Below are positions 4,902-53,258 of a DNA stretch of 57,335 nucleotides, piece after piece. Made by a program: the position numbers and the translations under genes. The notes under the pieces were generated by a model. The model saw nothing but the letters and a program-made list of their open reading frames with translations. It was not told the DNA's origin and searched no databases. Source of the DNA: Octopus bimaculoides. Taxonomy: Eukaryota. Each line of letters opens with the position of its first letter. The stretch's first letter is position 1. Location: NCBI RefSeq assembly GCF_001194135.2, contig NC_068981.1:25097472-25154806 (forward strand). Direction: 5' to 3'.

Positions 4902-4945
<44 letters not shown>

Positions 4946-4994
4946 TATATACACACATATATATACGTATATATGTCTGTGTAAGTGTTCGTGT

Positions 4995-5203
4995 GTCTGC
5001 GTGCATGTCCCTACCACTGCTTGAGAACCGGTGTTGGTACATCTACTTTCCCGTCAATTGGGGGTTTGGCAAAACCCGACAGAATAAGTATGAAGGAAGC
5101 GAAACTTAACGGAGTCGATTCATTCGACTAAAATTCTTGGATGTGATACGCAAGCATTGTCGCAGTCAAATGACTGAAACAAGTAAAAGAATAGAAGAAT
5201 ATA
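4995..5203 (+). mobile_element. 3' tail of an abundant tRNA/CORE-type SINE; homologous copies at about 3270-3455, 11150-11350, 20830-21050
   Basis: Diagnostic tail gcagtcaaatgactgaaacaagtaaaagaatagaagaata, also seen in the longer copies at 56231-56557 and 17069-17411. Confidence 0.8.
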
Positions 5204-5220
5204 ATGTCAAGACTACTTAC

Positions 5221-5235
5221 TTTAGTTATAATCAT
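5221..5235 (-). CDS. IL17: IL-17 first coding micro-exon copy b (MIITK); best candidate exon 1 for paralog B
   Basis: tcagtata-ATG ATT ATA ACT AAA|GTAAGT (donor 5220-5215). Phase 0 joins the acceptor at 63. Same context as exon 1 of paralog A (ctcagtata-ATG ATA ACA AAA|GTAAGT). Confidence 0.8.
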
Positions 5236-5334
5236 TATACTGATTGTTCAATTGGAAATGAAATAATTAACGTGGCAATTAGATATTTTACGGTAGAAAC
5301 GAAGTTTGATCGTTTCACAGTGTGATATTTTCAG

Positions 5335-5495
5335 CGAGTGACGCTAATTCTCTAAGGTTTACTTTTATATAATTACCACGGATAGGGATTACCAGGTTAA
5401 ATTACTCATAATGTTAAAAAATAATGAATGAAAATTTGGTAATATAAAAATAAACCGGAACTGAAACAACGGAAACTTTTATGTTGACGTATATA
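5335..5495 (-). promoter_or_regulatory. Promoter of module b: TATAAAAG (5369-5362), Inr-like TCACTC with A at 5339, kappaB-like GGGATTACC (5385-5393), CCGGAA / GGAAACTTT / TGACGT block (5455-5490)
   Basis: TATA-to-Inr spacing is exactly 30 nt; motif order is shared with the paralog A promoter. Confidence 0.7.
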
Positions 5496-6880
5496 AACTA
5501 GTAATACTATATCACTCAATCACTCAATCACTCAATCACTCACTCACTCACTCACTCTCTCTCCCTCACTCACTCTCTCCCTCACTAACTCACTCGCTCA
5601 ATTGTTCAATCTCTTTCTTTCCTCGCTTACACGCACGCACACATACACACACATATTCACACAGAGAGGTTACTTTGACCGATAAAGTCTGTGCTTTATC
5701 TATTGTTTTTCATTAAGATCTACTTTTATAACTTTTATAGTTTCATAGTGTTGTTTTGTATTCTATGCAAATCATTTCTAAACTGGCGAAGGCTTTAAGC
5801 CCCAACGATATCCCAGAGGCTAAGTTTCGATGGGCAATTTCACATCTTAATTGCTATTAATTTATGTTTACGATTGTCATTATTTTATAACTTTTTCTAA
5901 GGTACATAATATAACTAAGAATCATACACTATAATGAATATAACAGACTACATAATTTGAGAAACATAACAGAGTTCAGAAGAATCGATACTGCGCGTCG
6001 GAAGAATTGTTACTGCGCTGGGCAAAATACTTAGCGGCATTTCGTCGATATTTGCGATCTGAGTCCAATTTCCGTCGAGGTCGACTTTACCCTTCATCTT
6101 TGATAAAATAAGTACTTGTTAAACACTGGAGTCGATGGGGTTGCCTTTAGAACAACAGAAATACCGAGTAAATTTCCCTTTGAAGGCGGAAAAATTGTCA
6201 ACATCCAATCATGGACTCGATCCTGTATCCCTGAAAGACTCCGGCTGAGTGCTTTACCAGTAAGCCACACTGCCCGCGTCTAATTAGGCAGGTGAATTTG
6301 TTAGTGGGCGGTTTAACATAATAGTAAAGACTCAGCCGGAGTTTTTGTGGGATATGTGTTCGAGTCCCATGGCTGATCGTTGACAAATTTTCCCGCTTGA
6401 TAACGGTAGTTACCCAGTATTTCTGCTGTTTGAGAAAATATCAACTTATTTGTATCGTACAATATGATGTTTGAAAACTTGTGTTCAAGTATTGCCATCG
6501 CTTGATCAAAATTTTCACACATGGGAAGGCTACGGGCAGCCATTTCTTATGGCTGCATCCTTAAATATTGTCAGGTTTTCTCTCAGAATTTCCCTCTCCT
6601 AGAGAGATGTTGTGACAACAAAGGAGGGGCTTTCCGTTCCCAGTGGGCCAACCACGCGCAACCCAAATTTTTTCCATTTCCGTGCGCACACATACGTGCA
6701 TACATACACATGTACACATATTGTTGGATGGCTGTTGACTGCTCATGAGCTCTTCTGCAATTTGACAGGTCTTATTTTTCGTCCTGCAATGTGTCCAACA
6801 ATCACCCTCCTCACTGCCCATGCAGCAGGTTGTACTGAGGTACATGTTACCAGTAACGCCCAAAAGTGACCTGATATCTT
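5440..6880. repeat. Upstream block U of the duplicated module; homologous to 11590-12420 (partial) and 21290-22740
   Basis: Long colinear matches, e.g. ctggcgaaggctttaagccccaacgata and gagctcttct...gacaggtcttatttttcgtcctgcaa, in all three copies. Confidence 0.9.
6186..6396. other. Palindrome formed by two divergent tRNA-like (Pol III A/B-box) units; second copy at 21993-22193
   Basis: Left arm (minus): TGGCTTACTGG...GGATCGAGTCC. Right arm (plus): ...gactcagccggagt...GTGTTCGAGTCCC. The arms are reverse complements (gcggaaaaattgtcaac / gttgacaaattttcccgc). Confidence 0.7.
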
Positions 6881-7896
6881 ACAATCCATACATACATACA
6901 TACATACGTGCATACATACATGCATGCATACATACATGCATGCATACATATACATACATACATGCATACATACATACATACATACATATATATNNNNNNN
7001 NNNNNNNNNNNNNNNNNNNNNNNNNNNNNNNNNNNNNNNNNNNNNNNNNNNNNNNNNNNNNNNNNTATATATACATATTTGTATCTAGGGATCATTATTA
7101 CGCCAATATCAATAACATACATACCGGTTTAATTGCACTCCTTTATTATTAGTTACTTGGCTAAATATCCAATGGACTAATCGACTCTTTGTTTAACTTG
7201 ATCAAACGGTCACCTTTTTGTTTTGGAATAATTTCAGAACATAAAGAGTGACGAAATGCCGCTTAGTATTTTGCCAAGCGCAGTAATGTTTCTGCCAGCT
7301 TGCCGTATTTTCTTTAGAATATAATGCTTCACAAATGTAGTTCATTTACACTGCGTGTCACATTGAGAAAATGTCTATTAAAATAGTCCTTGACTAACAG
7401 TTGCTTTGAAAGTGAACCTGGTAGACCGAAACTGTGACTCAGAACTGAACTCAGTAGTGGGACGTTGGTACAGAAGTTCCAGCGTTTTGAAGAGTTCAGA
7501 CACACCATCCTTAACCATAATTGTTCTCAGATATACTCTGACCCAGATTAGCGTTACCTGTTAAGGTCCCAGCTGTGGGTTAATTAGCATGTGACAACCG
7601 GTTTTAGCTTGTTTACATCTCTTAATGCGATTCATGAAACCAGATTATGAAATAAGTACTAGAATTAAGATAAGTTCTGGTGTTGATTTATTCGACTAAC
7701 CGTAGCAGGAAATGCTCCAGCATGGCTGCGGTCAATGACTGAAACAGATAAAAGAGTGTATATATTTTTATATAGTGCATTTGCCAAATGTAATTAAATC
7801 CAAGGTTTGGAATCATGGTGCCTTCGTTATCATTTATTGCTGCTTTGAAACAGGAATAATTAATGTTCTACATTTGTGGAAGTTTTGTTGTATATA

Positions 7897-9141
7897 TTGG
7901 GTCATCTCATAAACAATGCGGTTTTTTATACTTCTTTTATTTTTCAAAATAAAGATAGACAAAGTTCTTTTATAATCTAAAATATACTCTCCTTCATTTT
8001 CTACAATGGTCTTCCATCTATCTGGCAGACTTGCAAGGTTCCTCTTCCAAAATCCTTTTGTTCGTGATGAAAAATATTTCTCCAGTATTGATCTGACCTC
8101 GTCTACAGAATTCATATTTTTCCCGTCCAAATGATTTTGATGACTGCAGCATAAATGATAATCATATGGGGCAATGTCAGGCGAAAATGGTGGGTGCGGC
8201 ATCATTTCCCATTCAAACTACTTCAGCCTTTGAATGTGACCCTCACTGTATGTAGCCGAGCATTATCCTGATAGAAAAACACTTTTTGTCTTGAAACCAA
8301 AGATGGTCAGTTTTCTTCTAGCGCTGACTTAAGTCGTTCAAGCTTCTCGCAGTAGATCTCCTTTGTTATCGTTTGGTTTATGTTTAAAAGTTCAAAGTGG
8401 ACTAAACAGATAACAACATCTCGGTGAAGACCTTCTTTAGCCTGGGGTGCCAGCGCTTCTTCTTTCCCTACCCACTGTCTTTGGCGCTTGACAATTTTAT
8501 AGAGAACCCGTTTCTTGTCACCAGTCACTATTCGCTTCAAAACAAGGTTCATTCGTGAGACGTGACAGTAAAGAAAAGTACACATTCACTTTGCGCGCGA
8601 TTAGACTCGAAATGTTTGTGAGGAAAGCATTGATTCAATTTGCTTACTTTTCCGATGGCATGCAGGTGCGATGAATGGTGGAATGACCAAATTCAGGCTT
8701 CTCTGCTAGTTCCTCAATAGTTACGATGGGATTTTGTTCCACCAGGGTTTGCAGGACGTCTTCGTCGAGCTCTACATGTCTTCCAGGATATGGCTCGTCT
8801 TCTAGGTTGTAGAATCTGGCTCGGAATTTCTGGAACTACCGTTGACTCTAGCTTACGCATATTGTCCGATCCCCATATACTGCATTAATATTTCTCGCAC
8901 TTTCCGCTGCGTTGTTGCCTGTATTGAACTCATAAAGCATAATATACCGAATGTGCTCCTTTGCTACTCCCATTATGGCATTGAAATCGAACTGCATTCT
9001 TCAAAACTTGTAGTAAGAATAAAGACAAGGTAAAACTACTACATGCTTTTATAGTAATTTGATGCAGGTAGTTTATCCCGTCCCGCTTCGACTTTTAATT
9101 CATGCAGTTGAGAAAACCGCATTATTTATGGGTTGGCGCAA
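7897..9141 (-). mobile_element. Full-length, inactivated mariner (Tc1/mariner, DD34D-type) transposon
   Basis: About 30-bp TIRs (ttgggtcatctcataaacaatgcggtttt / aaaaccgcattatttatgggttggcgcaa), TA on both flanks, 1245 bp. Transposase motifs RIVTGDKK, HPPFSPDIAPYDYHL and WKTIVENEGEY; multiple stops and frameshifts. Confidence 0.93.
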
Positions 9142-9682: not shown

Positions 9683-9971
9683 TTATCTATCGGTACATGT
9701 AATATATAAAGTGAGAAGTGTTATATAATTAACTACATTGTATACTGATAATACTACATTAAATACTTGAAAATATTTACTGCCGGGATCATTACATCAT
9801 CAATCATATTTCCGCCCGTTTATATTTATAAATTCCTATTTATTCACATAACATTATGTCTCAATATCATACAGGATTTCCGATGCTACTTAACAGATAT
9901 AAATGTGTAGTAGACAAATGCTATGATTTTTGATGTCTATTATAGGGACATATGAACACATACTTGGATAT
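9600..9971. repeat. Distal continuation of block U: (TATG)n(TATC)n plus unique flank; homologous to 22750-23230
   Basis: ggtacat..aatatataaagt.agaagtgttatataattaactacattgtatac ... acacatacttggatataaata is present in both. Confidence 0.85.
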
Positions 9972-10091
9972 AAATATATATATATATATATNNNNNNNNN
10001 NNNNNNNNNNNNNNNNNNNNNNNNNNNNNNNNNNNNNNNNNNNNNNNNNNNNNNNNNNNNNNNNNNNNNNNNNNNNNNNNNNNNNNNNNNN

Positions 10092-10470
10092 CCATGGGGA
10101 CAGCCAATGTACAGTTGTGCGTGTGAGAATACTTGCTCTGTTAGATTCAAACCAACTGCTTGCACTGATTGTCCCTCCGCCTTGTTGATTGTCATGGGAA
10201 AGCAGAGTTTGATGGGAAATTGCATCTGTTTAAACTTGTAGGTTGTATCGGAGTGGGTAAGGGACATGGGAGTATGTCTTAGCCAGCGGCGGTTCATTCA
10301 AGATTGCTGCCTACAGAACTCGGGAGCACAATTTTTTGATAATCATCCGCGTACCATTGCACATTATTGGAGCATGTAAATACCTTAGCAGCATGATTGG
10401 CGCGCCAACTTTCAGATGCAGTTCGTGAGCTGGTAGTTCTGCGGGTCCCCACTTTTGTCAGATTTGTCAT
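10092..10470 (-). mobile_element. Helitron PIF1-like helicase C-terminal fragment (pseudogenised)
   Basis: Translates to PAHELHLKVGAPIMLLRYLHAPIMCNGTRMIIKK and QFPIKLCFPMTINKAEGQSVQAVGLNLTEQVFSHAQLY, matching the Helitron/PIF1 motifs LKVGxPIMLLRN, CNGTR, FAMTINKSQGQS and FSHGQLY. Confidence 0.9.
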
Positions 10471-11123
10471 GGACCAGCCGGTCTATCTCAGATACATGGG
10501 AAGCTGGATTAAATTTTTCATCAACACAGGGGAGCCGAAATAAATTATTTCAATGTCCAAGGGAAGCCAAATCACGAAAAATGCTGATCTATAACGATGG
10601 TTATTTAGGCACATCGTAAAAGTGATTATAATGTATTGCTTAATATAAAGAAAAGTATGTTTTTTCAAGCAAATACAGTTCGAAAAAAATATTTACCATT
10701 TCAAGTCATCGCTAAAAACAAAGCTCATCAATTTTTGAATGAAATAATTATTTTAATCTTTTATTCTAAGTTGTAAATTTTGCCCGAGAAATAAAGCAAA
10801 TAATCACCAAATGCATTGTTAAAAATCTGCAACTCGATAGCAAATATCTCCAAATTGATTAGAAATGCATAAATTTAACAATAACAATGTTTTTGAGATT
10901 CCGGTTCGAATGACATGAATGTTTTTGTCTCACTTTTGACACGTAATACTTAAATAGTGGGGGAGATATGATGTTGCTGTGGGCTGGAAGTATGCAAGAA
11001 GTTAAGATTTGTTTTTCACTAAAACCCAACCGGGACACTAAGTAAGGCATGTGTAAAATTTGAATGAAATTGGTTGTGTAGTTCTGGAATTTTAGGGATT
11101 CACACAGACACACAGACACACAT

Positions 11124-11163
<40 letters not shown>

Positions 11164-11368
11164 GTTTGTCTGCGTGTATGTCCCAACCAAGGCTTGAGAA
11201 CAGGTGTTGGTTCATTTACTTTCCCGTAAGCATCAGGCTCATGAAAGTGAAACTTAATGGAGTCGATTCATTCGACTAAAATTCTTGGATGTGATACGCA
11301 AGCATTGTCGCAGTCAAATGACTGAAACAAGTAACAGAATAGAAGAATATAATGTCAAGACTACTTAC

Positions 11369-11383
11369 TTTAGTTATAATCAT
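11369..11383 (-). CDS. IL17: IL-17 first coding micro-exon copy c (MIITK), intact donor; candidate alternative exon 1
   Basis: ATG ATT ATA ACT AAA|GTAAGT (donor 11368-11363); TATAAAAG at 11518-11511; near-identical to module b. Confidence 0.7.
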
Positions 11384-12679
11384 TATACTGATTGTTCAAT
11401 TGGAAATGAAATAATTAACGTAGCGGTAAGAGATTTTGCGGTAGAAACCTGAATTTGATCGTTTCAAAGTGTGATATTTTCAGCGAGTGACACTAATTCT
11501 CTAAGGTTTACTTTTATATAGTTACCACGGATAGGATTACCAGGTTAAATTACTCATAATGTTAAAAAATAATGAGTGAAAATTTGGTAATATAAAAATA
11601 AACAGGAACTGAAACAACGGAAAACTTTTACGTTTACGTATATAAACTAGTAATAATATATCACTCTATCCCTCACTCTCTCCCTCACTCTCTCTCCCTC
11701 ACTCACTCTCTCCCTCACTCTCTCTCCCTCACTCACTCTCTCCTTCACTAACTCACTCGCTCAATTGTTCAATCTCTTTCTTTCCTCGCTTATACGCACG
11801 CACACATACACACACACATTCACACAGAGAGGTTACTTTGACAGATAAAGTCTGTGCTTTATCTATTGTTTTCTATTAAGTGTTGTTTTGTATTTTATGC
11901 AAATCATTTCTAAACTGGCGAAGGCTTTAAGCCCCAACGATAGCTGAGGGGTTAAGATTTGATGGGGAATTCCACATCTTAATTGCTATTAACATATGTT
12001 TATGATTGCCCTTTTTTTCCCAAGTAATGCCTACGCATGATGATTTTCTATAGTGGAGGAAGGATTTGCACAAATCCAATACCATTCACTTAACATGGAC
12101 AACATAAACTCGAAAAGAAGAACTAGTCTGCATCCTTAAATATTGTCAGGTTTTCTCTCAGAATTTCTCTTTGCTAAAGAGATGTTGTGACAACAAAGAA
12201 GGGGCTTCTTGCTGTCAGTTGGCCAACCTCGCGCCTGGGCACTAACCCAACATTTTTCCATGTCCCCGCGCACACATATGTGCATATATATACATGTACA
12301 CATATTGTTGAATGGCTTTTGACAGGTCATGAGCTCTTCTACCCTTTGACATGTCTTATTTTTCGTCCTGCAAGTGTGTCCAACAATCTCAGTGTGTCCA
12401 ACAATCACAACCAATCAAATTTCTTGTGGTAAAAGGATGCCACAGAATGTACATCACATAGTGATTCGATTACTTTTGAGCAACAATGCTTATCCCATAC
12501 ATTTTAAAGTTTATTATGACATTCTGTAACACTTTTGAGCCAGCGCATTTTTCAATTCTAGTTGCATACTTTTTAAGACAACGCTTGTAGCATTTTATAT
12601 ATGTACCGTATTTCTCCTAATGGAGTGGCAGCCTCTAATAAACTGACACCCAAACGCCAACTCATTGAAATAGTGTGAC

Positions 12680-20660: not shown

Positions 20661-21056
20661 TTTCTGTTTTCCTATCTGTTCGTTCCGTTGTCTGTAGTTC
20701 ATTGTTCTAACAACGTCCTGTACCCTGATATGCATCTATATACACATGTAGATGTAAGTATATACATATATGTGTGTATACATGCATATATATTCTTTGT
20801 ATTATATATATATGTATGTATGTATATATCTATATGCGTGTGTGTGTTCATGTGTCTGCGTGTATGTCCTTACCACTACTTGAGAACCGGTGTTGTGAGT
20901 TTACTTTCTGGTAAATTGGGGCGGGGCAGGGTTTCAAAACCCGATAGAAGAAGTATCAAGGAAGGGAAACGTAATTGACTAAAATTCTTGGAGGTGATGC
21001 ATAAGCATTGTCGCAATCAAATGTCTGAAACAAGTAAAAGAATGGAAGAATATTAC

Positions 21057-21071
21057 TTTAGTTATAATCAT
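21057..21071 (-). pseudogene. IL-17 first micro-exon copy d (MIITK) with weakened donor and altered TATA; function uncertain
   Basis: ATG ATT ATA ACT AAA|GTAATA after a short intronic deletion relative to b and c. The TATA position reads TATATGAAAG. Confidence 0.65.
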
Positions 21072-22857
21072 TAAACAAATTGTTCAATTGGAAATGAAAT
21101 AATTAACGTGGCAATTAGATATTTTACAGTAGAGATCTGAGTTTCATCGTTTCACAGTGTGATATGTTTATTGAGTGGCACTAATTCTCTAAGGTCTACT
21201 TTCATATAGTTACCACGGGTACGGAATACCAGGGTAAATTGCAAAATGTGAAAAAAAAAATGAGTGAAAATTTCTACATATAAGAATAAACCGAAACTAA
21301 AACAAAAGGAAAACTTCTACGTTGACGTATATAAACTAGTAATAATATATCACTCACTCTATCCCTCACTCACTGTCTCCCTCACTAACTCACTGTCTCC
21401 CTCATTAACTCACTCGCTCAATTGTTCAATGTCTTTCTTTCCTCGCATACACGCACGCACACATACACACACACATTTACACACAGAGGTTACTTTGACC
21501 GATTGAGTCTGTGCTTTATCTATTGTACTTCATTAAGATCTACTTTTATAACTTTTATAGTTTCATAGTGTTGTTTTGTATTCTATGCGAATCATTTCTA
21601 AACTGGCGAAGGCTTTAAGCCCCAACGATATCTGAGAGGCTAAGTTTCGATGGGCAATTTCACATCTTAATTGCTATTAACATATGTTTACGATTGTCAT
21701 TATTTTATAACTTTTTCTAAGGTACATAATGTAACTAAGAATCATACACTATAATGAATATAAAAGACTATATAATTTTATAAATATAACAGAGCAGCGT
21801 GTCGGATGAATTGATACTGCGCTGGGCAAAGTACTTAGCGGCATTTCGACGATATTTGCGATCTGAACCCAATTTCCGTCGAGGTCGACTTTCCCCTTCT
21901 ACCGTGATAAAATAAATACTAGTTTAAACCACCCGGTGTCAATATAGTTGCCGTTAGAACAGCAGAAATACTGAGTAAATTGCTCTTTGAATGCGGAAAA
22001 ATTGTCAACAACCAGTCATTGACTCGATCCTATGCCCTCAAAGCCTCCGGCTAAGTGCTTTACCAGCAAGCTAACCTGCTCGCGTCTAATTCAGCAGGTG
22101 AATTTGTCAGTGGGTGGTTTAGCTTACTAGTAAAAACTCAGTTGGAGTCTTTGAGGGATGTGGGTTCGAGTCGCATGGCTGCTCGTTTTCCGCTTGGTAA
22201 CGTTTATTAAGCGTTTATTATTTCTTGTGTTTGAAAAAACATCAACTCATTTGTATCGTACAATATGATGGCTGCAAAGAATGTGTTCAAGTATTTCCAT
22301 CGCCTGATCGAAAGTCCCACAGATAGGAAGGCTAAGGCCAACCATTTCTGTGATAGGTTTTATTTTTTTCCGAGTAATGCCTACGCATGATGATTTTCTA
22401 TAGTGGAGGAAGGATTTGCAAAAATCCAATCCCACTCACTGAACATGGACAACATAAACTCGAAAAGAAGAACTAGTCTGTATCCTTAAACATTGTCAGG
22501 TTTTCTCTCAGAATTTCCCTCTCCTAGAGAGATGTTGTGACAAGAAAAGAGGGGCTTCTCGCTTCCAGTGGGCCAACCGCACACCTGGATACCAACCCAA
22601 ATTTTTCCATCTCCGTGTGCACGCATACGTGCATACATACACATGTACACATATTGTTGGATGGCTCTTGACTGCTCATGAGCTCTTCTGCCCTTTGACA
22701 GGTCTTATTTTTCGTCTTGCAGTGTGTCCAAGAATCACCCTTCTCACCGGCCGTATGTATGTATGTATGTATGTATGTATGTATGTATGTATGTATGTAT
22801 GTATTTATGTATTTATGTATGTGTGCATGTGTGTATGTATGTATGTATGTATGTATG

Positions 22858-24390: not shown

Positions 24391-24572
24391 AATCCTTTCT
24401 ACTATAGGCACAAGGCTTGATATTTGAGGGAGGAATAAGTCGATTATAATTCATCGGGAGAGGTTAGATGATTATTATTCCTCGGCGGAGTTTTAACTCA
24501 GAATGTAGCGACGGACGAAATACCACTAAGCATTTCGTCCGGCTTGCTAACGACTCTGCCAGCTCGCCGCTT
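24391..24572 (-). mobile_element. tRNA-derived SINE family 1 (ggcggcgagctggcagaatcgttagc...)
   Basis: Reverse complement of the copies at 28875-29090 and 40045-40256. Confidence 0.85.
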
Positions 24573-24604
24573 TAAACCATTAATAATAATTATAATAACG
24601 CTCT

Positions 24605-28798: not shown

Positions 28799-28874
28799 AT
28801 TCTGTTTAGAGATAGCTATCTAAATTTGAATACAATGCTTGTTTAATATAGGCAATATTATCAGAAATGTCTAA

Positions 28875-29090
28875 GGCAGCGAGCTGGCAGAATCGTTAGC
28901 ACGCCAGGCAAATGTGCTTAACGGCATTTCGTCCGTCTTTAGGTTCTGAGTTCAAATTCCTCCGAGGTCGAATTTGCCTTTCATCTTTTCGTGATCGATA
29001 AAATGAGTACCGGTTGAACACGGAGTGGGGTATAATCGACTTAACCATTCTCTTGAATTTTCGGACCTTGAGCAAAAATTTGAAACCAGT
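28875..29090 (+). mobile_element. tRNA-derived SINE family 1
   Basis: A-box-like TGGCAGAATCGTT and B-box-like GAGTTCAAATTCC; body shared with 38100-38310, 39872-40030, 40045-40256, 54250-54440, 5975-6185 and 21800-21990. Confidence 0.85.
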
Positions 29091-29305
29091 TTTATCAAAA
29101 GAGTCTCATTAATTTTCACTATGTACAATATCGAAAGACAATATCAATACACAAAATAAAATACCTGCCCCCCCGCCTAAAAATTTGAACATAATATTTT
29201 TCAGTAAAGATAACTAACGCAAGACAACTCCAGAAATGTATAATAAGAGATCCCTAAATATAAGAAAGAGTAAAAACAAGAAAGAAATTATGGTTTGTAT
29301 TATTC

Positions 29306-29311
29306 TTTATT
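29306..29311 (-). terminator. Candidate polyadenylation signal (AATAAA) of IL-17 paralog A
   Basis: First minus-strand AATAAA I found downstream of the stop codon, about 860 nt away; ATTAAA variants at about 29334 and 29379. Confidence 0.45.
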
Positions 29312-29489
29312 AATATGGAAATTTTGCAACAAATTTAATATAAATAACATATAAAAGATATACCATTTCATGGTAAAATTTAATAAAATATATTACGTAA
29401 ATATATTTATATAATTATCAAAACGTTTTATAGTATCCAAAAGATTTTAAAATTTCTATAAAAATATACAAAATAAAAAAAGTTATTAT

Positions 29490-29703
29490 AATAGTTATAA
29501 AAATAAATATTTTGTAATAAATAGTTATTAAAATAAATATTTTGTAATAAATAGTTATTAAAATAAATATTTTGTAATAAATAGTTATTAAAATAAATAT
29601 TTTATGATAAATAGTTATCAAAATAAATATTTTAGAATAAATAGTTATAATAAATAATTTATAATAAATATTTTATGACAGTTACAAAAATAAATATATA
29701 AAT
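29490..29703 (-). repeat. 30-bp minisatellite (about 5-6 copies) forming an AU-rich-element array in the putative 3'UTR
   Basis: Sense unit ACAAAAUAUUUAUUUUAAUAACUAUUUAUU. 14 AUUUA pentamers counted between 29504 and 29703, mostly as UAUUUAU. Confidence 0.8.
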
Positions 29704-29713
29704 NNNNNNNNNN

Positions 29714-29760
<47 letters not shown>

Positions 29761-30170
29761 TGGAACTGAATTGCTGTAGCGTAGTATATGTGTAGGCTTT
29801 GTCTTCTCACACTACACTGCATGTAACGAATCGTTAAGAAAGTAATATCTTGTATTATGAAATTTAGTCTTGATTTCTAGGTACTCATGGTGTATGTCCG
29901 TGAACTTATGTGAGACACAGGACTGTCAATTGTCTGAGAGTTGGCACGCGTAATGCCATCTGAAACAGCCTTGTGGCAAATTCGTTCTCGAGTTGGATTC
30001 CACGTCCACGAGTGATGTGGTGGAGTTAAAAAAAAAAGACAGATGTAGACATACATATACATATAGTGTGATATTTGTGAGTGCATACATTGTAATAACC
30101 ACATGGTGGTCTCGTTGCTCAATAACTTTCGCGTTACACGCTGATTGTGTGAAATATAGCTGTTTTACGT

Positions 30171-30692
30171 CTACTCTGCGTATTGATTTACTTCAGAAAT
30201 AACACTAACTTTTTGTGCACAAACACAGGCCGTTGCTACCTCAATCACACTTGGTTTATAAACATACATTCCGTCAATGCATTCACCTGTACGTTGGAGG
30301 ATAGCCATTTTACTATATATTGTAGTACAGTAATGATTGTGATCAGAGCTTAAACACTGTTTGCAGCGGCACACAACTTCAGTAAATGTTGGCGGAAAAT
30401 ACGTCGAGTTATGGATAATCTTCAGAGACCATGGACAAGTTGAGCGGTTACCGATGTCAGTGGATAAACCATCAGATGTAGGGTGAGTTTTATTTTCGTT
30501 GGTCAATAGTGCTTTACTACTTTCATTTGGAACCATTTCGGCGGGTAGAAAAAAGTCATTACTATTGACTTCACTGAGAAGACTTTTATAACGAGCTTGC
30601 AAGCTGGGTGGTATTTTACATTGGGTCGGAATTGATGCTGTGGATACAATCAAGAGGTAGTTGAAGAAGAGGATTACAATCTGGACGAGAAC
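30171..30692 (-). CDS. IL17: IL-17-like cytokine paralog A, exon 2 (173 codons + stop)
   Basis: Acceptor tttgtatatttacag|GTT at 30693-30694 extends the listed ORF by 13 codons. IL-17 cystine-knot pattern RSTCPW...EVVCRCKQC...C..I...ILQR..EC...VATACVC; hydrophobic signal segment; N-glycosylation sequons NES, NKT, NRS, NST. Confidence 0.95.
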   Translation of the reverse strand, partial: VLVQIVILFFNYLLIVSTASIPTQCKIPPSLQARYKSLLSEVNSNDFFLPAEMVPNESSKALLTNENKTHPTSDGLSTDIGNRSTCPWSLKIIHNSTYFPPTFTEVVCRCKQCLSSDHNHYCTTIYSKMAILQRTGECIDGMYVYKPSVIEVATACVCAQKVSVISEVNQYAE

Positions 30693-31935: not shown

Positions 31936-31947
31936 TTTTGTTATCAT
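31936..31947 (-). CDS. IL17: IL-17-like paralog A, coding part of exon 1 (MITK)
   Basis: ATG ATA ACA AAA|GTAAGT, a perfect donor in phase 0, matching the exon-2 acceptor. Gives a 177-aa precursor MITKVLVQIVILFFNYLLIVSTA-SIP... with a 1243-bp intron. Confidence 0.88.
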
Positions 31948-36831: not shown

Positions 36832-38520
36832 ACATACATATACACGCATTCCTACATACATGCATACATAGATGTGTGTGTGTAGGTATTTATACATTCT
36901 TTCTCAGCAGTGTGTTAGTACAAGTCGACGTATGAGTAAAACGTTTTATTTTTCAGCACCACGGACTTTATCCATTGACATCATTCCTATATGACATTTA
37001 GGGAATTTACGAATCAAGCACAAAAACAGAGACACCGCCACGAAAAAATTTATTTATTTATAATAACTTTTCACGTTTGTAATCTAAGGAAAATGGCTTT
37101 ATAGATATGAAAAAAGAAAAGGCTTTATAGATATGAAAGAAAGAAAAGTAAGTATTCTGTTTTATTTACCAATATTAGTCGAGCATATGTATAATTCAGT
37201 CTATGGTGATTTTTAGATATCTATATATTATAGCTTCTAAGCAACTAAAGCTAATATCCTGCATCTCTGAAACACAAAAGTCCGGTTGACTGATTATCGA
37301 CATTCATTAACTCTCTAAGTACTTAGCTTACGACAATGCGTTCTTCAGGATTTTTTCGTTTTACTATGTATTTAGTATAACAGACATATCCTTTAACTAT
37401 TTCTTAAACGGATTGATTGGATGAATAAGGATTTCCATCTTTTAGTATTTAACAACTTATGACACATCGTTGATTGACGTTACCCAGTAGTTGTTGTTTC
37501 CTGGCAAAATACGTATTTAAAAAAATATAGAGTTGACTGATGCTATCCATTATCTATTTGCTATTCATTTTGCCAATCCTGAGATGATAAAAGAGACAAT
37601 ATTTCTTGGTACAAAATCGAAATCAAAGTCCGTTAGGTAATTGAAGAAATGTATATCGTTAGTTTTTTACGGGTTCTTACACTTGTAAAACCCTTTACAG
37701 AACATATATTTATTCTGTATGTTTATTGGAACCTTATTTTATGATGTCAACGCGATCTACTATAGTACAATCTTTGAATGTGATCCTGTTGTTTTTAATG
37801 TTTAACGCTGAATCGGCTCTTATCAATTAGACTTAGAATCAATGACATCAAAGCCTTGGTAGTCCTTACTTAATTTAAGTCGTAGTGTATCTAGGACTCC
37901 GTATTTCAGCATGACCTAACTTTTGAAAGCTAATGTTTTTGAAAGTGAGAGATATGGCAAATCTTTTTAGCAGGTCAAGCACTACCGAGATGATATGAGA
38001 TTGGCTCCTAAGATACAACGTAACTGTATTTTCCCTTGATCACATTAGTGCATTTCAAGTTTAAGTTACTACGTAATTAGGTATTATTTTATGTTGTAAG
38101 GCAGCGAGATGGTAGAAAAAATTGCTTAGCGGCATATCATTCATCTTTACGTTGAGAGTTCAAATTATGTAGAGGTCGGCTTTGCTTTTCATCCTTTGGC
38201 GTCGATAAAATAAGAAGCAGTTAAGCACTGAGAGTGGAGTGTCGATATAACTAAATTACCCACTCCTGTGAACTTGCTGGCCTTGTGCCAAAATTTGAAA
38301 CCAATATTGTTATATGTTGTATACAAATGGTCGAATTATTTTATTTCGATAAGTTACCATGTTATTAAATACTATTATTGTATATTTGATGTGCCTCTGT
38401 ATTCGCGTTATTACATTTTACGTCTTATCTAATAATAGGTTGTATGCATGATATGTAGTTATTACATATTTCTTGTATTTTTATTTCACACGATTCCGAA
38501 CATAATATCCATTATATTCT

Positions 38521-38895: not shown

Positions 38896-40044
38896 TACGA
38901 TTGTATTGTGAAAATTATTTTATATGCGATAAATTTTACAAATTTTTCTTATCATATTACTATAGATTTTTGAAATACTATCTTTTCTTAAATATATCCT
39001 TCTCAGTAAATTCCCTGTATGTGTAAAAGACAGTACTAAGTACTTAAAAGCCTGACATATTTCATAACAAGAGTGGATGGAAATGTGCAGAGATATATTT
39101 TTAACAGTGCTGTTTAAAATGCTTATGCACTTTTGGCAATTGGATAAAGTACATACTGACGCAATGGGTTTTCTAAACGGTGAAAGAGAGAGAGAGAGAG
39201 AGAGAGTGAGGGACAGAGAAAAAGAAAGAGAGACAAAGTAAAAGAGAAAAAAAGGAAAGGGAAGGAGGAGTGAGAGATCACTGTGAATGTTGTAAGTTGA
39301 TAGTTTCATCGTGATCAACGAATTCTTGGATTACACTTTATAAGCATCAATATTAATATATTACTTTATACACACACACACACAAACACACACACACACT
39401 CGCAAAGCAAAAGAAAGTTAAAGTCATGATAATTGAAAAGAATGTGGAGTGTTTATTCATATAATATGAGTAATTCTTAAATGCAAATATTATAAGCCGA
39501 CATTAAATATGTAATTGGTTTTCTGCGAAAACATACATGAGTAAGCACACCGCATTCCTTTCAAGTTGTTAAATGAGATATGGATTGTGCAGGGCAGCTT
39601 CAAGTTTCATAGCATTATCTTGTCTCAACAAAAAGATTCTCATTTCCTATTTTCGATTTCGTCTTGTGATAATTTTCTCTGGTTGTGTTTTAATTATTTT
39701 TTTTTTCTGCTATTCCCATTTTATCTAGCCTTCTTCTATTTTCTATGTCAACTGGAGGAAAAGTTCTTTTCTTTCTTACAAATCGCTTCTCTTCTAGTGA
39801 TTTTGAATTTGCTTTAAAAAAGTTTAAACCTGAAACAGTGTTGAAACAAATGTTATATTTGAGAAGAATCTAAGGTAGTGAACTGGCTGAATCATTAATA
39901 CGACGAGCAAAATGCTTAGCTGCATTTCGTTCATCTTTGAGTCTTAAGTTCTAATTCCGCTGAGGTCGATGTAATCAAGTTTCTCATTCGCCCTATATTG
40001 CAGGCCTTGTACCAAAATTTGAAACCAATATTAATCCTAAATAA

Positions 40045-40256
40045 GGCCGCGAGCTGGGAGAATCGCTAGCACGCCGGAGAAAGTGCTTTCTGGCATTTCG
40101 TCCGTCTTTACTTTCTGAATTCAAATTCCACCGAAGTTGACATTATCTTTCATTCTTTCACTAAAGTAGTTACCTGCCATGTACTGGGTCGTTGTAATCG
40201 ACTAGCCCCCGCCTCATCCAAAATTTCAGGCCTTGTGCCTATAGTAGAAAGGATAT
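40045..40256 (+). mobile_element. tRNA-derived SINE family 1
   Basis: ggccgcgagctgggagaatcgctagcacgccgg ... ggccttgtgcctatagtagaaagga. Confidence 0.85.
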
Positions 40257-44087: not shown

Positions 44088-46043
44088 TTATGCTGGCTGA
44101 ATCGTTAGCACGCCGGGGAAAATGGGCATCTCTTTCATATCATACTTACGGCACACACAATTACAGGAGCAGTTCTTTTGTATTTCGATTTTCAGGTCCT
44201 TATATTTACTTAATTTGTCAAATTGCTTTACAGATATATATTTGTCAGTGAGAATACTTACGTCTATCAATTTACAAGTATTTTCTTTCTTGTCTTTAAT
44301 GACTGTCTGATCGATTGGCCTTGATTGATCTGTCGGTATTGACTGGAAAATCCCAGAGGATAATGACATCTTTACCTTCAGCGACTGGCTCAAGATGATG
44401 TTCATACCTGTAAGCAGAAGTGCTGATATTTCCAATGTAAATACTGTCCTACCCTATCGTGGCGACTTTTGTATTTGTTTGGTGTCAGTACAGGACATCT
44501 CGAGACAAGATGGAGTATTGCTTCATTAAATTTATAGCAGAATCTGCATTTAGGGTCAGAACCGTTTCGAAGAACGATAGCCTGGTAGTTTTGGTAAGTA
44601 AGCTTTAATCTTGTGTCGTCAATATGAAACCTTTAGTCTCTGCTTTCAGCCCTGAGCTTCTCAGCTACCTCGAGACTGGATGGTCTATTGCTTCGTCAAA
44701 TGCATCACAGAATCTGCATTTAGAGTCAGAACCGTTTTGAAGAAAATTAGCCTGGTAGTTTTTGGTTGGCAAGCTTTAATCTTGTGTCGTCAATATGAAA
44801 CCTTTAGTCTCTGCTTTCAGCCCTGAGCTTCTCAGTCNNNNNNNNNNNNNNNNNNNNNNNNNNNNNNNNNNNNNNNNNNNNNNNNNNNNNNNNNNNNNNN
44901 NNNNNNNNNNNNNNNNNNNNNNNNNNNNNNNNNNNNNNNNNNNNNNNNNNNNNNNNNNNNNNNNNNNNNNNNNNNNNNNNNNNNNNNNNNNNNNNNNNNN
45001 NNNNNNNNNNNNNNNNNNNNNNNNNNNNNNNNNNNNNNNNNNNNNNNNNNNNNNNNNNNNNNNNNNNNNNNNNNNNNNNNNNNNNNNNNNNNNNNNNNNN
45101 NNNNNNNNNNNNNNNNNNNNNNNNNNNNNNNNNNNNNNNNNNNNNNNNNNNNNNNNNNNNNNNNNNNNNNNNNNNNNNNNNNNNNNNNNNNNNNNNNNNN
45201 NNNNNNNNNNNNNNNNNNNNNNNNNNNNNNNNNNNNNNNNNNNNNNNNNNNNNNNNNNNNNNNNNNNNNNNNNNNNNNNNNNNNNNNNNNNNNNNNNNNN
45301 NNNNNNNNNNNNNNNNNNNNNNNNNNNNNNNNNNNNNNNNNNNNNNNNNNNNNNNNNNNNNNNNNNNNNNNNNNNNNNNNNNNNNNNNNNNNNNNNNNNN
45401 NNNNNNNNNNNNNNNNNNNNNNNNNNNNNNNNNNNNNNNNNNNNNNNNNNNNNNNNNNNNNNNNNNNNNNNNNNNNNNNNNNNNNNNNNNNNNNNNNNNN
45501 NNNNNNNNNTGGTAGTTTTTGGTTGGCAAGCTTTAATCTTGTGTCGTCAATATGAAACCTTTAGTCTCTGCTTTCAGCCCTGAGCTTCTCAGCTACCTCG
45601 AGAGTGGATGGTCTATTGCTTCGTCAAATGCATCACAGAATCTGCATTTAGAGTCAGAACCGTTTTGAAGAAAATTAGCCTGGTAGTTTTTGGTTGGCAA
45701 GCTTTAATCTTGTGTCGTCAATATGAAACCTTTAGTCTCTGCTTTCAGCCCTGAGCTTCTCAGTCATTGATGGGTTGTTGCTTAGTCTACATCAGCATTT
45801 TGGCGTCGAAGTATATACTGTCTGTGTAGAGGCTTCTGGCCTCGCTGCTCCTCAATTTGTTTCTGCCCGTTCTTTTCTGCAGTCTATTTGATCCGTTTTG
45901 CTTGTTTGGTGGTAGTGGTTTCAAGTTATTCATCTAATTCAGGGTTAATGCTAAGTTTCCTTGCGAATTTACAAGCTTCCTTGGCAATAGAATGTGACTT
46001 TTGCTGTTTTTCCTGTTTGCACACAAGCCGTAGCATCCAATCC

Positions 46044-48219: not shown

Positions 48220-50740
48220 GAATAATAGCGCACGTGAAATATATAAAAGTAACTTTCCAATGCTTTCAGCACCACCTTCGCCATTGCAGGAACAAAACTG
48301 TCAATGACAACAAAAAGCAACAATACCAGCGAGAAGACTGCCATCTCCACCACCAGCAACAGCCAACAATTTCCAAGCCTCGAACAACGATATCCCGACA
48401 CTGTATGGACTTCGCAAGGACCACAAAGTAACCACTGATCCTGTGGCGGGACCACCAACAAGACCAGTCTGTGGAGCGAATATCGCTAGCAACGACAGGA
48501 TTTCCTACTTCCTCTCGATCATAAGCCCCATAATCCGGATGTCAATTGATGTTTGTGACAGCACGGAAGATCTCCTCAGCAGGATCAACGACTGTAACAA
48601 CACCTGCGACCTGACAGGATGTATAGTGGGTAGCATGGATGTGGTATCCCTACACCCATCTATCGACGTGGAGAAGTGCGTGGAGATGATCAACGAGAGC
48701 GAAGTGGAGTTCCGCAATGACGACACATAGAAACTGGGCTTCCTACTTAGACTGACATATGGCAATGAATATCTAGATAAACACGACCTTAGAAGTTTCT
48801 GCCCTAGTAGACGTTTAAGAGGTAGATCACCCACAATTACTTCTATGGCTAGGAAGACCCCTATAGAGAGATGGAGCGGATGAACCAGAGCCATACGGCC
48901 CTCCCGTAAGTGTTTATCAGGTAAAGAAAATGATCGCACATGCACTAGGAGCTAGTATAAGAGTTACCCAAAAGGCCACACGTTTATGTTTAACAACAAA
49001 ATATACGCCCAGGACGAGGGGGCAGCCATCGTCGTTAGTATCGCCGGTGATGTGGCCAACCTTTTCATGGTATGATGGGACAGAAGGCTTAAGGAACGCC
49101 TCACACAGAACATGTACTCTCGCTATGTCGATGATATCAACGTAGTGGTAAATGCACCCCCACAAGAGAGTACTCTTGAAATAGAAATAGAAACTAATAC
49201 TATGGAGAGCATCCAGCAAATAACCAACTCCATCCACCAGAGTTTTAAGGTCACGATAGACTACCCTACAAAACACCCTAGCCATAGACTACCAGTTCTA
49301 GTTACAGAACTCTGGCTGGAAACTGAGAATAATAAAACCCGAATCCTTCATTCACACTATGCCAAACCCATGGCCTCCAAATACTTGATCCACCGGAACT
49401 CAGCTATCGCGGACAATCCCAAATTCAATATATTGATGGCAGACCTCGTCAGTGTGTCCCGCATGTGCGACTCTACAGAGTTAAAGATACACATACAACA
49501 TTTTGTTCACCGCATGCAGTTCTCAGGTTACAGCCATAAAGAAAGGATCAGAGTATACAAAGGAGCCATGAGGAAATTTGAAGCTATCATACGTAACGAT
49601 AGGAATGGGAGCAAGTTATGGAACACCATCTATAGGAGCAAGTTATGGAACACCATTGAAAGGACTAAGAAGAAAATAGGGAAGACCAACTCATGGTATG
49701 ATAGCCACAAATACCAGAGTGTCGTGTTCGTCGACACCACCCCTAGAGGCGAACAGGCGTACCACTGTAGAAGGGCCCTAGACAAACTTAAGCTATGAAT
49801 TAAGGTTGTTGAAAGGCCAGGCAATCCTATCAAATCCCTAATCGGTAGAACCTACCCTCTTAGTAGACCCCCTGTACTGATAGGAACTGTATTGCATGTA
49901 GATTTATCCCACAAACAAACTGTAAAGCCAGAAATGTAGTCTATAGTATAAGAGGGACGGTGCAGTAACAAGACAACGACGTACGTAGTGGAAACAGCAC
50001 GGATCATAGGAGAGCGGGTAAATGTGCATTGGAGGGAACTTAAGGAAGAGAAGAGCTCATCGGTTCTGTAACAGCACACCGAGCAGGAACACGGGGGCTC
50101 ACTCAACAACATAGAAGTTAAAATCTTATCCACATATAGAACAGACGCAACGCTTAGACAAATTACAGAAGCTACACACATAATGGACGATAAACCTAGC
50201 CTGAATAAGAAACTGGAATGGAACACTAGCGCACACCCCCAACATACCACAAAATATGACAGAATAAGATCCCCATAAACTGATAACAAAATGAACAGAA
50301 TAGAATACAATATACAAATAAACAAATGGAATTAAATAGCTATATACGTTAACAAAATTATATTAAATTAAATACAATAACGAAAGAAAATAAAAAAATA
50401 ATGAGTAGGTATAACCACATGAACAAAATAAATGAAAGCAAATGAACTAACGTGTATAAGTAGGAGATACAGATAATGCAGGTACTCACCACACACACGC
50501 ACTTACTAAGCATAGACACACATGGGGGTATACGCATGCTCAAATAAAGACGCATACAATAGGCATACAAAATACAAAATGGCTGATCGTTAGTAAGTAA
50601 GACACACAAATAAGAAAGAAAGAAGCAAAGGACCACTGATGAGGTCACAGAAGTGTGACGAAAGAACTCTGGTCGAAATGCACGATTAATGTAAAAAAAT
50701 AAAATAAAGGTGAAGCAAATTAGCACCAAATATATAGTGC
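48000..50740 (+). mobile_element. Near full-length Penelope-like retroelement (RT + GIY-YIG), inactivated
   Basis: PTLYGLRKDHK, PPTRPVCGA, GSMDVVSLHPSI, SRYVDDINV, HYAKPMAS, SGYSH, NVVYSI...TYVVETAR...VHW and LRQITEA...PSLN; several stops and frameshifts. Confidence 0.92.
50631..50674 (+). ncRNA. Minimal type-I hammerhead ribozyme motif at the Penelope 3' end
   Basis: gacca-CTGATGA-G-GTCACA-gaag-TGTGAC-GAAA-GAAC-TC-tggtc; perfect 5-bp stem I and 6-bp stem II; predicted cleavage after C50669. Confidence 0.75.
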
Positions 50741-53040: not shown

Positions 53041-53258
53041 ATAATCCTTTCTACTGAAGGCACAAGGCCTTGAAAATTTAGGGGAGGAGACTAGTCGATT
53101 ACATCGACCCCAGTGTTTCACTGGTACTTAATTTGTCGACCCGAAAGAGTGAAAGGCAAAGTCGACTCCAGCAGAATTTGATCTCAGAACGTGAAGACGA
53201 GTGAAATACCGTTAAGCCCTCCGCCCGGCCTGCTAACGATTCTGCCGACTCGTCGCCT
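53041..53258 (-). mobile_element. tRNA-derived SINE family 1
   Basis: Reverse complement of 40045-40256. Confidence 0.85.

What the first reader, a model, noticed from the sequence alone, without database searches (positions are those of the whole stretch)
29490..29703. A minisatellite that mass-produces AU-rich decay elements in the IL-17 3'UTR
A 30-bp unit with two UAUUUAU motifs is tandemly amplified about 5-6 times, giving 14 AUUUA pentamers in 200 nt between the stop codon and the first AATAAA. ARE-mediated decay (TTP/ZFP36 family, HuR) of cytokine mRNAs, including vertebrate IL-17A, is established. Inference: repeat copy number could be a heritable dial of cytokine mRNA half-life.
Basis: partly seen in the sequence, partly recalled or inferred. 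Interest (0 to 1): 0.75.

Follow-up and report, generated by a model that had tools for sequence, protein, structure and literature searches.

The report
AU-rich minisatellite behind octopus IL-17 gene
A real 30-bp AT-rich tandem repeat lies about 500 nt downstream of an Octopus bimaculoides interleukin-17-like gene and would add 14 AUUUA decay motifs to its mRNA, but nothing here shows that the mRNA reaches it, and similar arrays occur in intergenic octopus DNA.

Summary
TRF finds a 30-bp unit repeated 6.4 times at 29483-29670. The minus strand of 29490-29703 carries 14 ATTTA and 13 TATTTAT, against a maximum of 6 ATTTA per 214 nt anywhere else in the window.

The gene is real. It is a two-exon, minus-strand interleukin-17-like gene of Octopus bimaculoides (XP_014769322.2, Pfam IL17), with its stop codon at 30173-30171. 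The array lies 468-689 nt downstream in the sense orientation. It precedes the first canonical poly(A) signals: ATTAAA at +787 and AATAAA at +860.

Inclusion in the mRNA could not be tested. A 10-N assembly gap and an (AT)24 tract separate the stop codon from the array. Weak poly(A) variants sit at +303 and +315, exactly where similarity to another octopus species ends.

None of eight paralogue 3' flanks carries such an array; the related-species contig ends before that position. Two other ATTTA-dense AT-rich stretches lie away from gene ends. The array is single-copy in about 186 kb sampled.

Best reading (about 0.4): a young slippage-born minisatellite inside a long 3'UTR isoform, acting as a multi-site AU-rich element. 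Near-equal rival: inert DNA beyond the real poly(A) site. The "heritable dial" idea has a precedent in the CTLA-4 3'UTR (AT)n repeat. Interest is modest.

The parts
31936..31947 (-). Exon 1 coding part of the IL-17-like gene (ATG ATA ACA AAA = MITK), followed by a GTAAGT splice donor
   Evidence: Sequence read. The gene range 31947-30171 comes from the NCBI model found, and locus L001 is identical to the window.
30171..30692 (-). Exon 2: 173 codons plus the TAG stop (30173-30171), encoding the IL-17 cystine-knot domain; preceded by the splice acceptor ttacag
   Evidence: ORF; Pfam PF06083, 47.7 bits; 100% identity to P0001; invariant cysteines C90, C112, C117, C126, C142, C160 and C162.
29762..30170 (-). 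Single-copy proximal 3' flank with no ATTTA and no canonical poly(A) signal; alignable to another octopus species only up to about +300
   Evidence: 76% identity excluding gaps, similar to the 78% of the intron, and similarity ends near +300. Searches also apply.
29851..29868 (-). Weak poly(A)-signal variants ACTAAA (29868-29863, +303) and AATACA (29856-29851, +315); a candidate proximal cleavage region that would exclude the array
   Evidence: TTCATAATACA is also present in L002 just before its (AT)n tract.
29714..29761 (.). (AT)24 microsatellite between the stop codon and the array
   Evidence: (TRF, period 2, 24 copies).
29704..29713 (.). 10-N assembly gap directly abutting the array, so the junction and the true copy number are unverified
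   Evidence: The same gap is present in GCA_001194135.2.
29482..29703 (-). AT-rich minisatellite with five 30-nt units, one 27-nt unit and degenerate edges; on the sense strand it carries 14 AUUUA, 13 UAUUUAU and 8 WWWUAUUUAUWWW. On the plus strand it reads as 12 AATAAA and 3 ATTAAA
   Evidence: RNA fold: -26.1 kcal/mol for 221 nt, with the MFE structure at frequency 0.0002 in the ensemble.
29306..29384 (-). First canonical poly(A) signals on the sense strand: ATTAAA at 29384-29379 (+787), ATTAAA at 29339-29334 (+832) and AATAAA at 29311-29306 (+860)
29255..29297 (-). Inferred distal cleavage site (CA at 29297-29296 and 29292-29291) followed by a T-rich, GT-containing downstream element (tttctttcttgtttttactctttctt)
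   Evidence: Read directly. This is an inference, not transcript evidence.
28870..29075 (+). SINE-like dispersed repeat, antisense to the gene and beyond the inferred poly(A) site; not part of the array
   Evidence: at least 7 further copies in the window at 72-90% identity. ARAGORN and Rfam find no tRNA.

Best explanation
Shown: this is a young, locus-specific AT-rich minisatellite, a 30-nt unit that is itself a diverged dimer of roughly 15-mers. It lies 468-689 nt downstream of the stop codon of one member of the expanded Octopus bimaculoides IL-17-like gene cluster, with the T-rich strand in the sense orientation. Its most likely origin, by inference, is replication slippage or unequal exchange in AT-rich DNA next to an (AT)n tract. 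Inferred: the gene's major or distal mRNA isoform reads through to the first canonical signal, AATAAA at 29311, with cleavage near 29291-29296 and a 3'UTR of about 880 nt. The array would then be part of the 3'UTR. There its 13 UAUUUAU heptamers, spaced 14-16 nt apart in weakly structured AU-rich RNA, would act as a multi-site AU-rich element. They would be bound by the mollusc ZFP36/TIS11-type tandem zinc-finger protein, and competitively by ELAV/HuR-type proteins. That would recruit CCR4-NOT, speed up deadenylation and decay, and make expression of this paralogue transient. Copy-number change by slippage could shift the number of sites, but with 12-14 sites already present the effect per unit is probably small.
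For: The array, its register and its motif counts are established. Gene identity, strand and stop codon are established. There is no AATAAA or ATTAAA on the sense strand until +787, +832 and +860, and the +860 site has a textbook context of CA at +10 to +15 followed by a T-rich tract. First canonical signals of the paralogues range from +140 to +913, so +860 is not an outlier. The array RNA is predicted to be nearly unstructured. All variable positions among the six in-register units (positions 8, 9, 10, 14, 25 and a 3-nt deletion) fall outside both heptamers; p is about 0.01-0.03, which is weak and post hoc. A sense-oriented ATTTA-dense array within 900 nt of a given stop codon is expected in under 1% of genes at the density seen in about 186 kb (three such arrays). 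Literature: IL-17A (CTLA-8) was first described as bearing AU-rich instability sequences (cited in PMC8353272). Fish IL-17A/F 3'UTRs carry ATTTA motifs (PMC8276262). Molluscs have a zfp36 gene (PMC3546996). Octopus cleavage and polyadenylation do not depart from other invertebrates (PMC9699675).
Against: There is no transcript evidence. No Logan or other contig from O. bimaculoides carries this exon apart from the reference genome. An 880-nt 3'UTR is about 2.4 times the octopus median of 350-380 nt. The weak signals at +303 and +315 coincide with the end of cross-species similarity. The absence of a canonical signal in the unique 457 nt is expected by chance, with P(0) = 0.65. None of the paralogue flanks examined has an array, and most have few or no AREs. 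The edge units have broken cores. Similar AT-rich ATTTA-dense stretches exist in intergenic DNA. A 10-N gap separates the array from the coding sequence. With 31-36 IL-17 genes in the genome, one such coincidence has roughly a 20% chance.
Confidence: 0.4

Rival explanations
1. Inert intergenic minisatellite. The mRNA is cleaved at a proximal, non-canonical site near +320 to +340 (ACUAAA or AAUACA), giving a 3'UTR of about 330 nt with no AUUUA at all. The array is then just a neutral slippage product in AT-rich spacer DNA that happens to lie downstream.
For: Weak variants sit at +303 and +315, exactly where similarity to L002 ends, and AATACA is conserved in L002. A 3'UTR of about 330 nt matches the octopus median of 350-380 nt. 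The paralogues have no array. ATTTA-dense AT-rich stretches occur far from gene ends at L008 19407-19620 (11 per 214 nt) and L003 479-692 (9 per 214 nt). A random AT-rich unit of this composition has two or more ATTTA on one strand 16% of the time.
Against: Non-canonical hexamers are minority signals in animals (general knowledge). A strong canonical site with good context lies just past the array. Substitutions among the units avoid the heptamers. Two full UAUUUAU per unit is rare by composition, at 0.9%.
Confidence: 0.4
2. The array acts on the plus strand or at the DNA level. Read on the plus strand it is 12 AATAAA and 3 ATTAAA. It could serve as a poly(A)/termination pad against antisense or read-through transcription entering the IL-17 gene from the SINE-rich left flank, or as an AT-rich matrix-attachment or unwinding element.
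For: One search counts 12 AATAAA and 3 ATTAAA on the plus strand. The array is 94% AT.
Against: No plus-strand gene is called within 10 kb on either side. Nothing indicates plus-strand transcription. The plus-strand motif count follows automatically from the same repeat.
Confidence: 0.05
3. Assembly artefact. The array-bearing contig is misjoined across the 10-N gap, or the repeat is collapsed or expanded, so its distance from the gene, or its copy number, is wrong.
For: The array abuts the N gap at 29704-29713, and the other side of the gap is an (AT)24 tract. The window has ten N gaps, typical of a short-read scaffold. The chromosome-level record carries the identical gap.
Against: A short estimated gap implies read-pair support. 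The flanks on both sides are single-copy in the sample. Degenerate, unique edge units anchor the array.
Confidence: 0.07

Closest known systems
AU-rich elements of cytokine mRNAs (IL-17A/CTLA-8, TNF, GM-CSF), bound by ZFP36/TTP and HuR
   Same: Both involve AUUUA and UAUUUAU motifs in an A/U-rich context downstream of a cytokine coding sequence. The array has 8 perfect ARED-type 13-mers. IL-17A was first described as bearing AU-rich instability sequences, and fish IL-17A/F 3'UTRs have 2-3 ATTTA.
   Different: The array has no overlapping AUUUAUUUA and only one strict UUAUUUAUU nonamer inside it, so it is not a class II ARE. Its motifs are evenly spaced 14-16 nt apart because they are copies of a 30-nt unit. 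It has many more sites than the 2-3 ATTTA reported for the fish IL-17A/F 3'UTRs. Membership in a mature 3'UTR and destabilising activity are untested.
CTLA-4 3'UTR (AT)n microsatellite
   Same: It is a length-polymorphic AT-rich tandem repeat in the 3'UTR of an immune gene. Longer alleles give a shorter mRNA half-life (PMC555850). This is the same 'heritable dial' logic. An (AT)24 tract also lies just upstream of the octopus array.
   Different: The CTLA-4 repeat is a dinucleotide repeat without canonical AUUUA, in a vertebrate gene, and its polymorphism and effect have been measured. Here the unit is 30 nt with explicit UAUUUAU sites, and neither polymorphism nor effect is known.
Neutral AT-rich minisatellites and low-complexity AT-rich arrays in intergenic DNA
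   Same: The array has 94% AT, a short unit, near-identical central copies with degenerate edges, and a position next to a microsatellite. Comparable ATTTA-dense stretches lie away from gene ends in O. sinensis and O. bimaculoides.
   Different: It is the best-defined array in about 186 kb sampled, with score 285 and the only period of 20 or more with five or more good copies. It sits in the sense orientation between a stop codon and the first canonical poly(A) signal.
Classic ARE in the paralogue P0004 3' flank (L003, +347 to +360)
   Same: It belongs to the same gene family and cluster. It has overlapping ATTTATTTA immediately before an ATTAAA signal, which shows that at least one octopus IL-17 paralogue has a conventional ARE.
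   Different: It is a single compact element, not a tandem array, and shows no sequence similarity to the array.

Membership tests
IL-17 cytokine family (Pfam PF06083) | IL17 domain match above the curated threshold | tested here: met
   47.7 bits against a cut-off of 24, E = 2.1e-12, covering profile positions 1-80 of 81.
IL-17 cytokine family (Pfam PF06083) | Conserved cystine-knot cysteines and an N-terminal hydrophobic signal sequence | tested here: met
   C90, C112, C117, C126, C142, C160 and C162 are invariant among 10 octopus IL-17-like proteins. The hydrophobic N-terminus VLVQIVILFFNYLLIVSTAS was read. No signal-peptide predictor was run.
IL-17 cytokine family (Pfam PF06083) | Orthology to vertebrate IL-17A specifically | not tested
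   Only octopus homologues were retrieved. The gene belongs to a lineage-specific expansion of 31-36 genes (PMC8353272).
AU-rich element (ARE) | Location within the 3'UTR of the mature mRNA | not testable with these tools
   No transcript data were reachable. The position is compatible with the first canonical signal at +787 to +860 but not with the weak signals at +303 and +315.
AU-rich element (ARE) | AUUUA pentamers in an A/U-rich context (ARED 13-mer WWWUAUUUAUWWW) | tested here: met
   the putative 3'UTR holds 16 ATTTA, 14 TATTTAT and 8 perfect 13-mers; 14, 13 and all 8 of these lie in the array. Background is 0.21 per kb per strand.
AU-rich element (ARE) | Class II: two or more overlapping UUAUUUA(U/A)(U/A) nonamers | tested here: not met
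   no ATTTATTTA, and only one strict nonamer inside the array.
AU-rich element (ARE) | Binding by ZFP36/ELAV proteins and accelerated decay | not testable with these tools
   Only indirect support is available: a zfp36 gene is reported in molluscs (PMC3546996), and the predicted RNA is weakly structured.
Minisatellite / VNTR | Head-to-tail copies of a 10-100 bp unit, five or more copies | tested here: met
   period 30, 6.4 copies, 90% matches; units in register.
Minisatellite / VNTR | Copy number varies among individuals | not testable with these tools
   Only one assembly is available, and it is identical to the window. The array abuts a gap.
Dispersed repeat, or satellite derived from a transposable element | Other copies of the unit or its flanks elsewhere in the genome | tested here: not met
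   blastn found no other copy in the window or in L002-L006. Motif-density and TRF scans of L007-L009 found no comparable array in any 3' flank. The sample is only about 186 kb, so the whole genome was not tested.

The most novel reading that the evidence does not exclude
The array is a selection-maintained, copy-number-variable ARE cassette that arose in a single paralogue of the expanded octopus IL-17 family. It would give that paralogue its own burst-like expression kinetics. Minisatellite slippage would then be a route by which duplicated cytokine genes acquire, and heritably tune, post-transcriptional control.
Probability: 0.12. Interest if true: 0.6.

Novelty: new member of a known kind. 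Interest (0 to 1): 0.3.

Why it matters
If the array is in the mRNA, it would be a clean natural example of AU-rich decay elements created in bulk by tandem amplification rather than by point mutation. It would sit in an invertebrate cytokine family whose regulation is essentially unknown. It would also offer a simple genotype-to-half-life test: unit number against decay rate. It could show how one copy of a 31-36-gene IL-17 expansion diverged in regulation rather than in protein sequence. If the mRNA ends before the array, this is an ordinary AT-rich minisatellite with no consequence.

Tried and rejected
1. Transcript evidence. I looked for Logan or other contigs encoding the protein. Only the reference chromosome carries it, so no cDNA-like contig was found.

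2. Orthologue comparison. Isoform X1 (P0014, XP_029649194.1) is not on record. tblastn of L007-L009 found only paralogues. The one related-species contig, L002, stops in its (AT)n tract before the position of the array.

3. A newer assembly to close the gap. L001 from GCA_001194135.2 is base-for-base identical to the window, N gap included.

4. Origin from a transposable element. The array and both flanks have no other copy in the sample, so this was rejected within that limited sample.

5. A 'poly(A)-signal desert' as evidence for read-through. This was rejected because 65% of shuffles of the unique 457 nt also lack a canonical signal.

6. Known RNA families and tRNAs. There is no Rfam hit in the window and no ARAGORN tRNA.

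7. Pfam on seven other ORFs in the window that looked like transposable-element remnants found nothing.

8. Open-access papers describing ATTTA motifs in mollusc IL-17 3'UTRs. None was found with the search terms used. I recall such statements in oyster and pearl-oyster cloning papers, but only from memory.

9. I ran no further search on 3'UTR pseudo-ORFs or on a ZFP36 query. One search showed that the database holds no O. bimaculoides read-derived contig for this locus, and a query with the tandem zinc-finger domain would return thousands of unrelated taxa.

Full report
**1. What is in the sequence**

The window is eukaryotic, 30-37% GC over most of its length (22-45% in 2-kb windows), and full of microsatellites and N gaps. 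TRF reports a tandem array at 29483-29670 with period 30, 6.4 copies, 90% matches and score 285. The motifs of interest read on the minus strand, where the unit is TATTTATTACAAAATATTTATTTTAATAAC.

Cut in register, the array has these parts:
- five full 30-nt units at 29643-29494, two identical and the others with 1-3 substitutions;
- one 27-nt unit at 29670-29644;
- degenerate edges at 29703-29671 and 29493-29482.

The unit is itself a diverged dimer of roughly 15-mers that share TATTTATT. No other 214-nt stretch of the window, on either strand, exceeds 6 ATTTA, and the mean is 0.66.

**2. The gene**

A minus-strand ORF ending at 30171 matches Pfam IL17 at 47.7 bits, against a cut-off of 24. 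It is 100% identical to the 177-aa 'interleukin 17-like protein [Octopus bimaculoides]', XP_014769322.2. The only contig on record encoding it is chromosome CM046601.1 of GCA_001194135.2. The fetched locus is base-for-base identical to the window, so chromosome position equals window position plus 25,097,471.

The gene has two coding exons. Exon 1 is ATG ATA ACA AAA at 31947-31936, followed by GTAAGT. Exon 2 is 30692-30171, preceded by ttacag, with a TAG stop at 30173-30171. The cystine-knot cysteines are invariant among ten octopus paralogues. The gene belongs to a cluster: paralogues lie about 65 kb, 240 kb, 345 kb and 395 kb away on the same chromosome. The literature reports 31-36 IL-17 genes in this species (PMC8353272). 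Only this one IL-17 gene lies in the window.

**3. Position of the array relative to the gene**

Counting from the stop codon on the sense strand, the layout is:
- +1 to +409: unique sequence with no ATTTA;
- +410 to +457: an (AT)24 tract;
- +458 to +467: a 10-N assembly gap;
- +468 to +689: the array;
- +787 and +832: ATTAAA;
- +860: AATAAA, followed by CA at +10 to +15 and a T-rich, GT-containing tract.

This is weaker evidence for inclusion in the mRNA than it sounds. Dinucleotide shuffles of the unique 457 nt lack a canonical hexamer 65% of the time. Recognised weak variants (ACTAAA at +303, AATACA at +315) are present.

A Logan genomic contig from another octopus species (L002; its exon-2 ORF product P0003 is 82% identical in protein) aligns to the 3' flank only up to about +300. 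Identity there is 76% excluding gaps, no better than the 78% of the intron and below the 88% of the coding sequence. The contig retains TTCATAATACA shortly before its own (AT)n tract, where it ends. A proximal cleavage near +330 would give a 3'UTR close to the octopus median of 350-380 nt (PMC9699675) and would contain no AUUUA at all. On the other hand, the first canonical signals of the paralogues range from +140 to +913, so +860 is not unusual for the family.

**4. Quality of the motifs**

The putative 880-nt 3'UTR contains 16 AUUUA, 14 UAUUUAU and 8 perfect ARED-type 13-mers (WWWUAUUUAUWWW). Nearly all are in the array, and the background is 0.21 13-mers per kb per strand. There is no overlapping AUUUAUUUA and only one strict UUAUUUAUU inside the array. 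It therefore fails the definition of a class II ARE. It is better described as an unusually multiplied set of dispersed sites spaced 14-16 nt apart.

The array RNA folds weakly: -26.1 kcal/mol for 221 nt, with the MFE structure at frequency 0.0002. Its z-score of -2.7 reflects the repeat symmetry. The sites would therefore be accessible to proteins that bind single-stranded RNA.

**5. Chance and selection**

The 14 pentamers are one event amplified, not 14 independent events. A shuffled unit of the same composition carries two or more ATTTA on a given strand in 16% of trials. It carries two or more full TATTTAT in only 0.9%, although the dimeric substructure makes that figure too generous.

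Among the six in-register units, every variable site (positions 8, 9, 10, 14, 25 and a 3-nt deletion) lies outside both heptamers. The probability is C(16,5)/C(30,5) = 0.03, or 0.013 if the deletion is counted. This hints at preservation of the motifs. It is post hoc, rests on few events that may share descent, and the edge units do have broken cores.

**6. Comparison with paralogues and background**

I examined the 3' flanks of eight paralogues: four from O. bimaculoides, three from O. sinensis and one from O. vulgaris. I also examined the L002 contig, which ends about 500 nt past its stop. None has a minisatellite. ATTTA counts within 900 nt are 0-7, against 16 here, and TATTTAT counts are 0-3, against 14 here.

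Only P0004 has a conventional ARE, an overlapping TATTTATTTATTA directly before an ATTAAA signal. The array and both its flanks have no other copy among the loci searched by blastn (the window and L002-L006). It is the top-scoring array with period 10 or more in about 186 kb.

Two other ATTTA-dense AT-rich stretches exist away from gene ends. One is L008 19407-19620, with 11 ATTTA per 214 nt, 6 kb from the nearest stop codon. The other is L003 479-692, with 9 per 214 nt. At that density, a sense-oriented array within 900 nt of one given stop codon is expected in under 1% of genes. Across 31-36 IL-17 genes the chance of one such case is about 20%.

**7. Mechanism and weights**

Shown: the array is a real, single-copy, young AT-rich minisatellite downstream of, and in the sense orientation to, a bona fide IL-17-family gene.

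Inferred, with confidence about 0.4: the mRNA, or a distal isoform, runs to the AATAAA at 29311. The array then acts as a multi-site ARE for the ZFP36/TIS11-type protein. A zfp36 gene is reported in molluscs (PMC3546996). Binding would promote CCR4-NOT-dependent deadenylation.

Near-equal rival, about 0.4: cleavage occurs upstream and the array is inert. Minor rivals are a plus-strand or DNA-level role (the array reads as 12 AATAAA and 3 ATTAAA on the plus strand) and an assembly problem at the abutting gap.

**8. Relation to what is known**

[quoted passage not shown] A length-variable AT-rich 3'UTR repeat that sets mRNA half-life is documented for CTLA-4 (AT)n (PMC555850). The octopus array would be a new member of this kind, with an unusual 30-nt tandem organisation. 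It is not a new principle.

**9. Limits**

Transcript data, the O. sinensis and O. vulgaris orthologous flanks, population copy number and any functional assay were out of reach. The copy number and the junction with the gene rest on a gap-ridden scaffold (ten N runs in the window), with a gap directly at the edge of the array.

Noticed in passing
window 29704-29761: A 10-N assembly gap and an (AT)24 microsatellite sit between the IL-17 stop codon and the array. If transcribed, the (AU)24 tract alone could form a long self-complementary AU hairpin, and it resembles the CTLA-4 3'UTR (AT)n repeat.
   Followed up: partly
window 29482-29703, plus strand: Read on the plus strand, the array is 12 AATAAA and 3 ATTAAA hexamers. 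This is a dense run of poly(A) signals facing any transcription that enters from the left.
   Followed up: partly
L003 12336+347 to +360 (paralogue P0004 3' flank): A conventional ARE with overlapping pentamers (TATTTATTTATTA) lies immediately before an ATTAAA signal. It is the only paralogue examined with a classic ARE.
   Followed up: partly
L008 19407-19620 (O. sinensis) and L003 479-692 (O. bimaculoides): These are AT-rich low-complexity stretches with 11 and 9 ATTTA per 214 nt on one strand, located 6 kb or more from any IL-17 stop codon. They show that ATTTA-dense arrays also arise in spacer DNA.
   Followed up: partly
O. sinensis chromosome CM016859.1 (no DNA returned): The orthologue is annotated with an isoform X2 whose first exon lies 204 kb away and is shared with another IL-17 gene, spanning five further IL-17 genes. 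This is either cross-paralogue splicing or a chimeric gene model.
   Followed up: no
window 4903-6547, 11116-12018 and 20758-22349 (also 6553-6814, 12128-12388 and 22478-22747): A segment of about 1-1.7 kb, with its own TCAC, CA and CATA microsatellites, occurs three times at 80-88% identity upstream of the IL-17 gene. It is either a dispersed repeat or local segmental duplication.
   Followed up: partly
window 28870-29075 (+), also 53093-53259, 40042-40159, 6000-6132, 24480-24574, 38119-38232 and 7234-7303: A SINE-like element of about 170-200 bp occurs in at least 7 diverged copies (72-82% identity). It looks tRNA-derived by eye, but ARAGORN and Rfam report nothing.
   Followed up: partly
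window 44499-44835 and 45510-45765: A 170-bp tandem repeat (88-98% identity between copies) continues on both sides of a 672-N gap. It is probably a longer satellite block that was collapsed in the assembly.
   Followed up: no
P0001, P0002 and P0003 (window 30171-30692): This orthologue group has His where the eight other octopus paralogues aligned have Cys (KTHPTS against KTCPTS, residue 74). This is a lineage-specific loss of one cysteine upstream of the knot.
   Followed up: no
window 7834-8205 (-), 9890-10297 (-) and 49112-49798 (+): These ORFs look by eye like remnants of a mariner-type transposase, a helicase and a reverse transcriptase (YVDD motif). Pfam gave no hit at E <= 0.01.
   Followed up: partly
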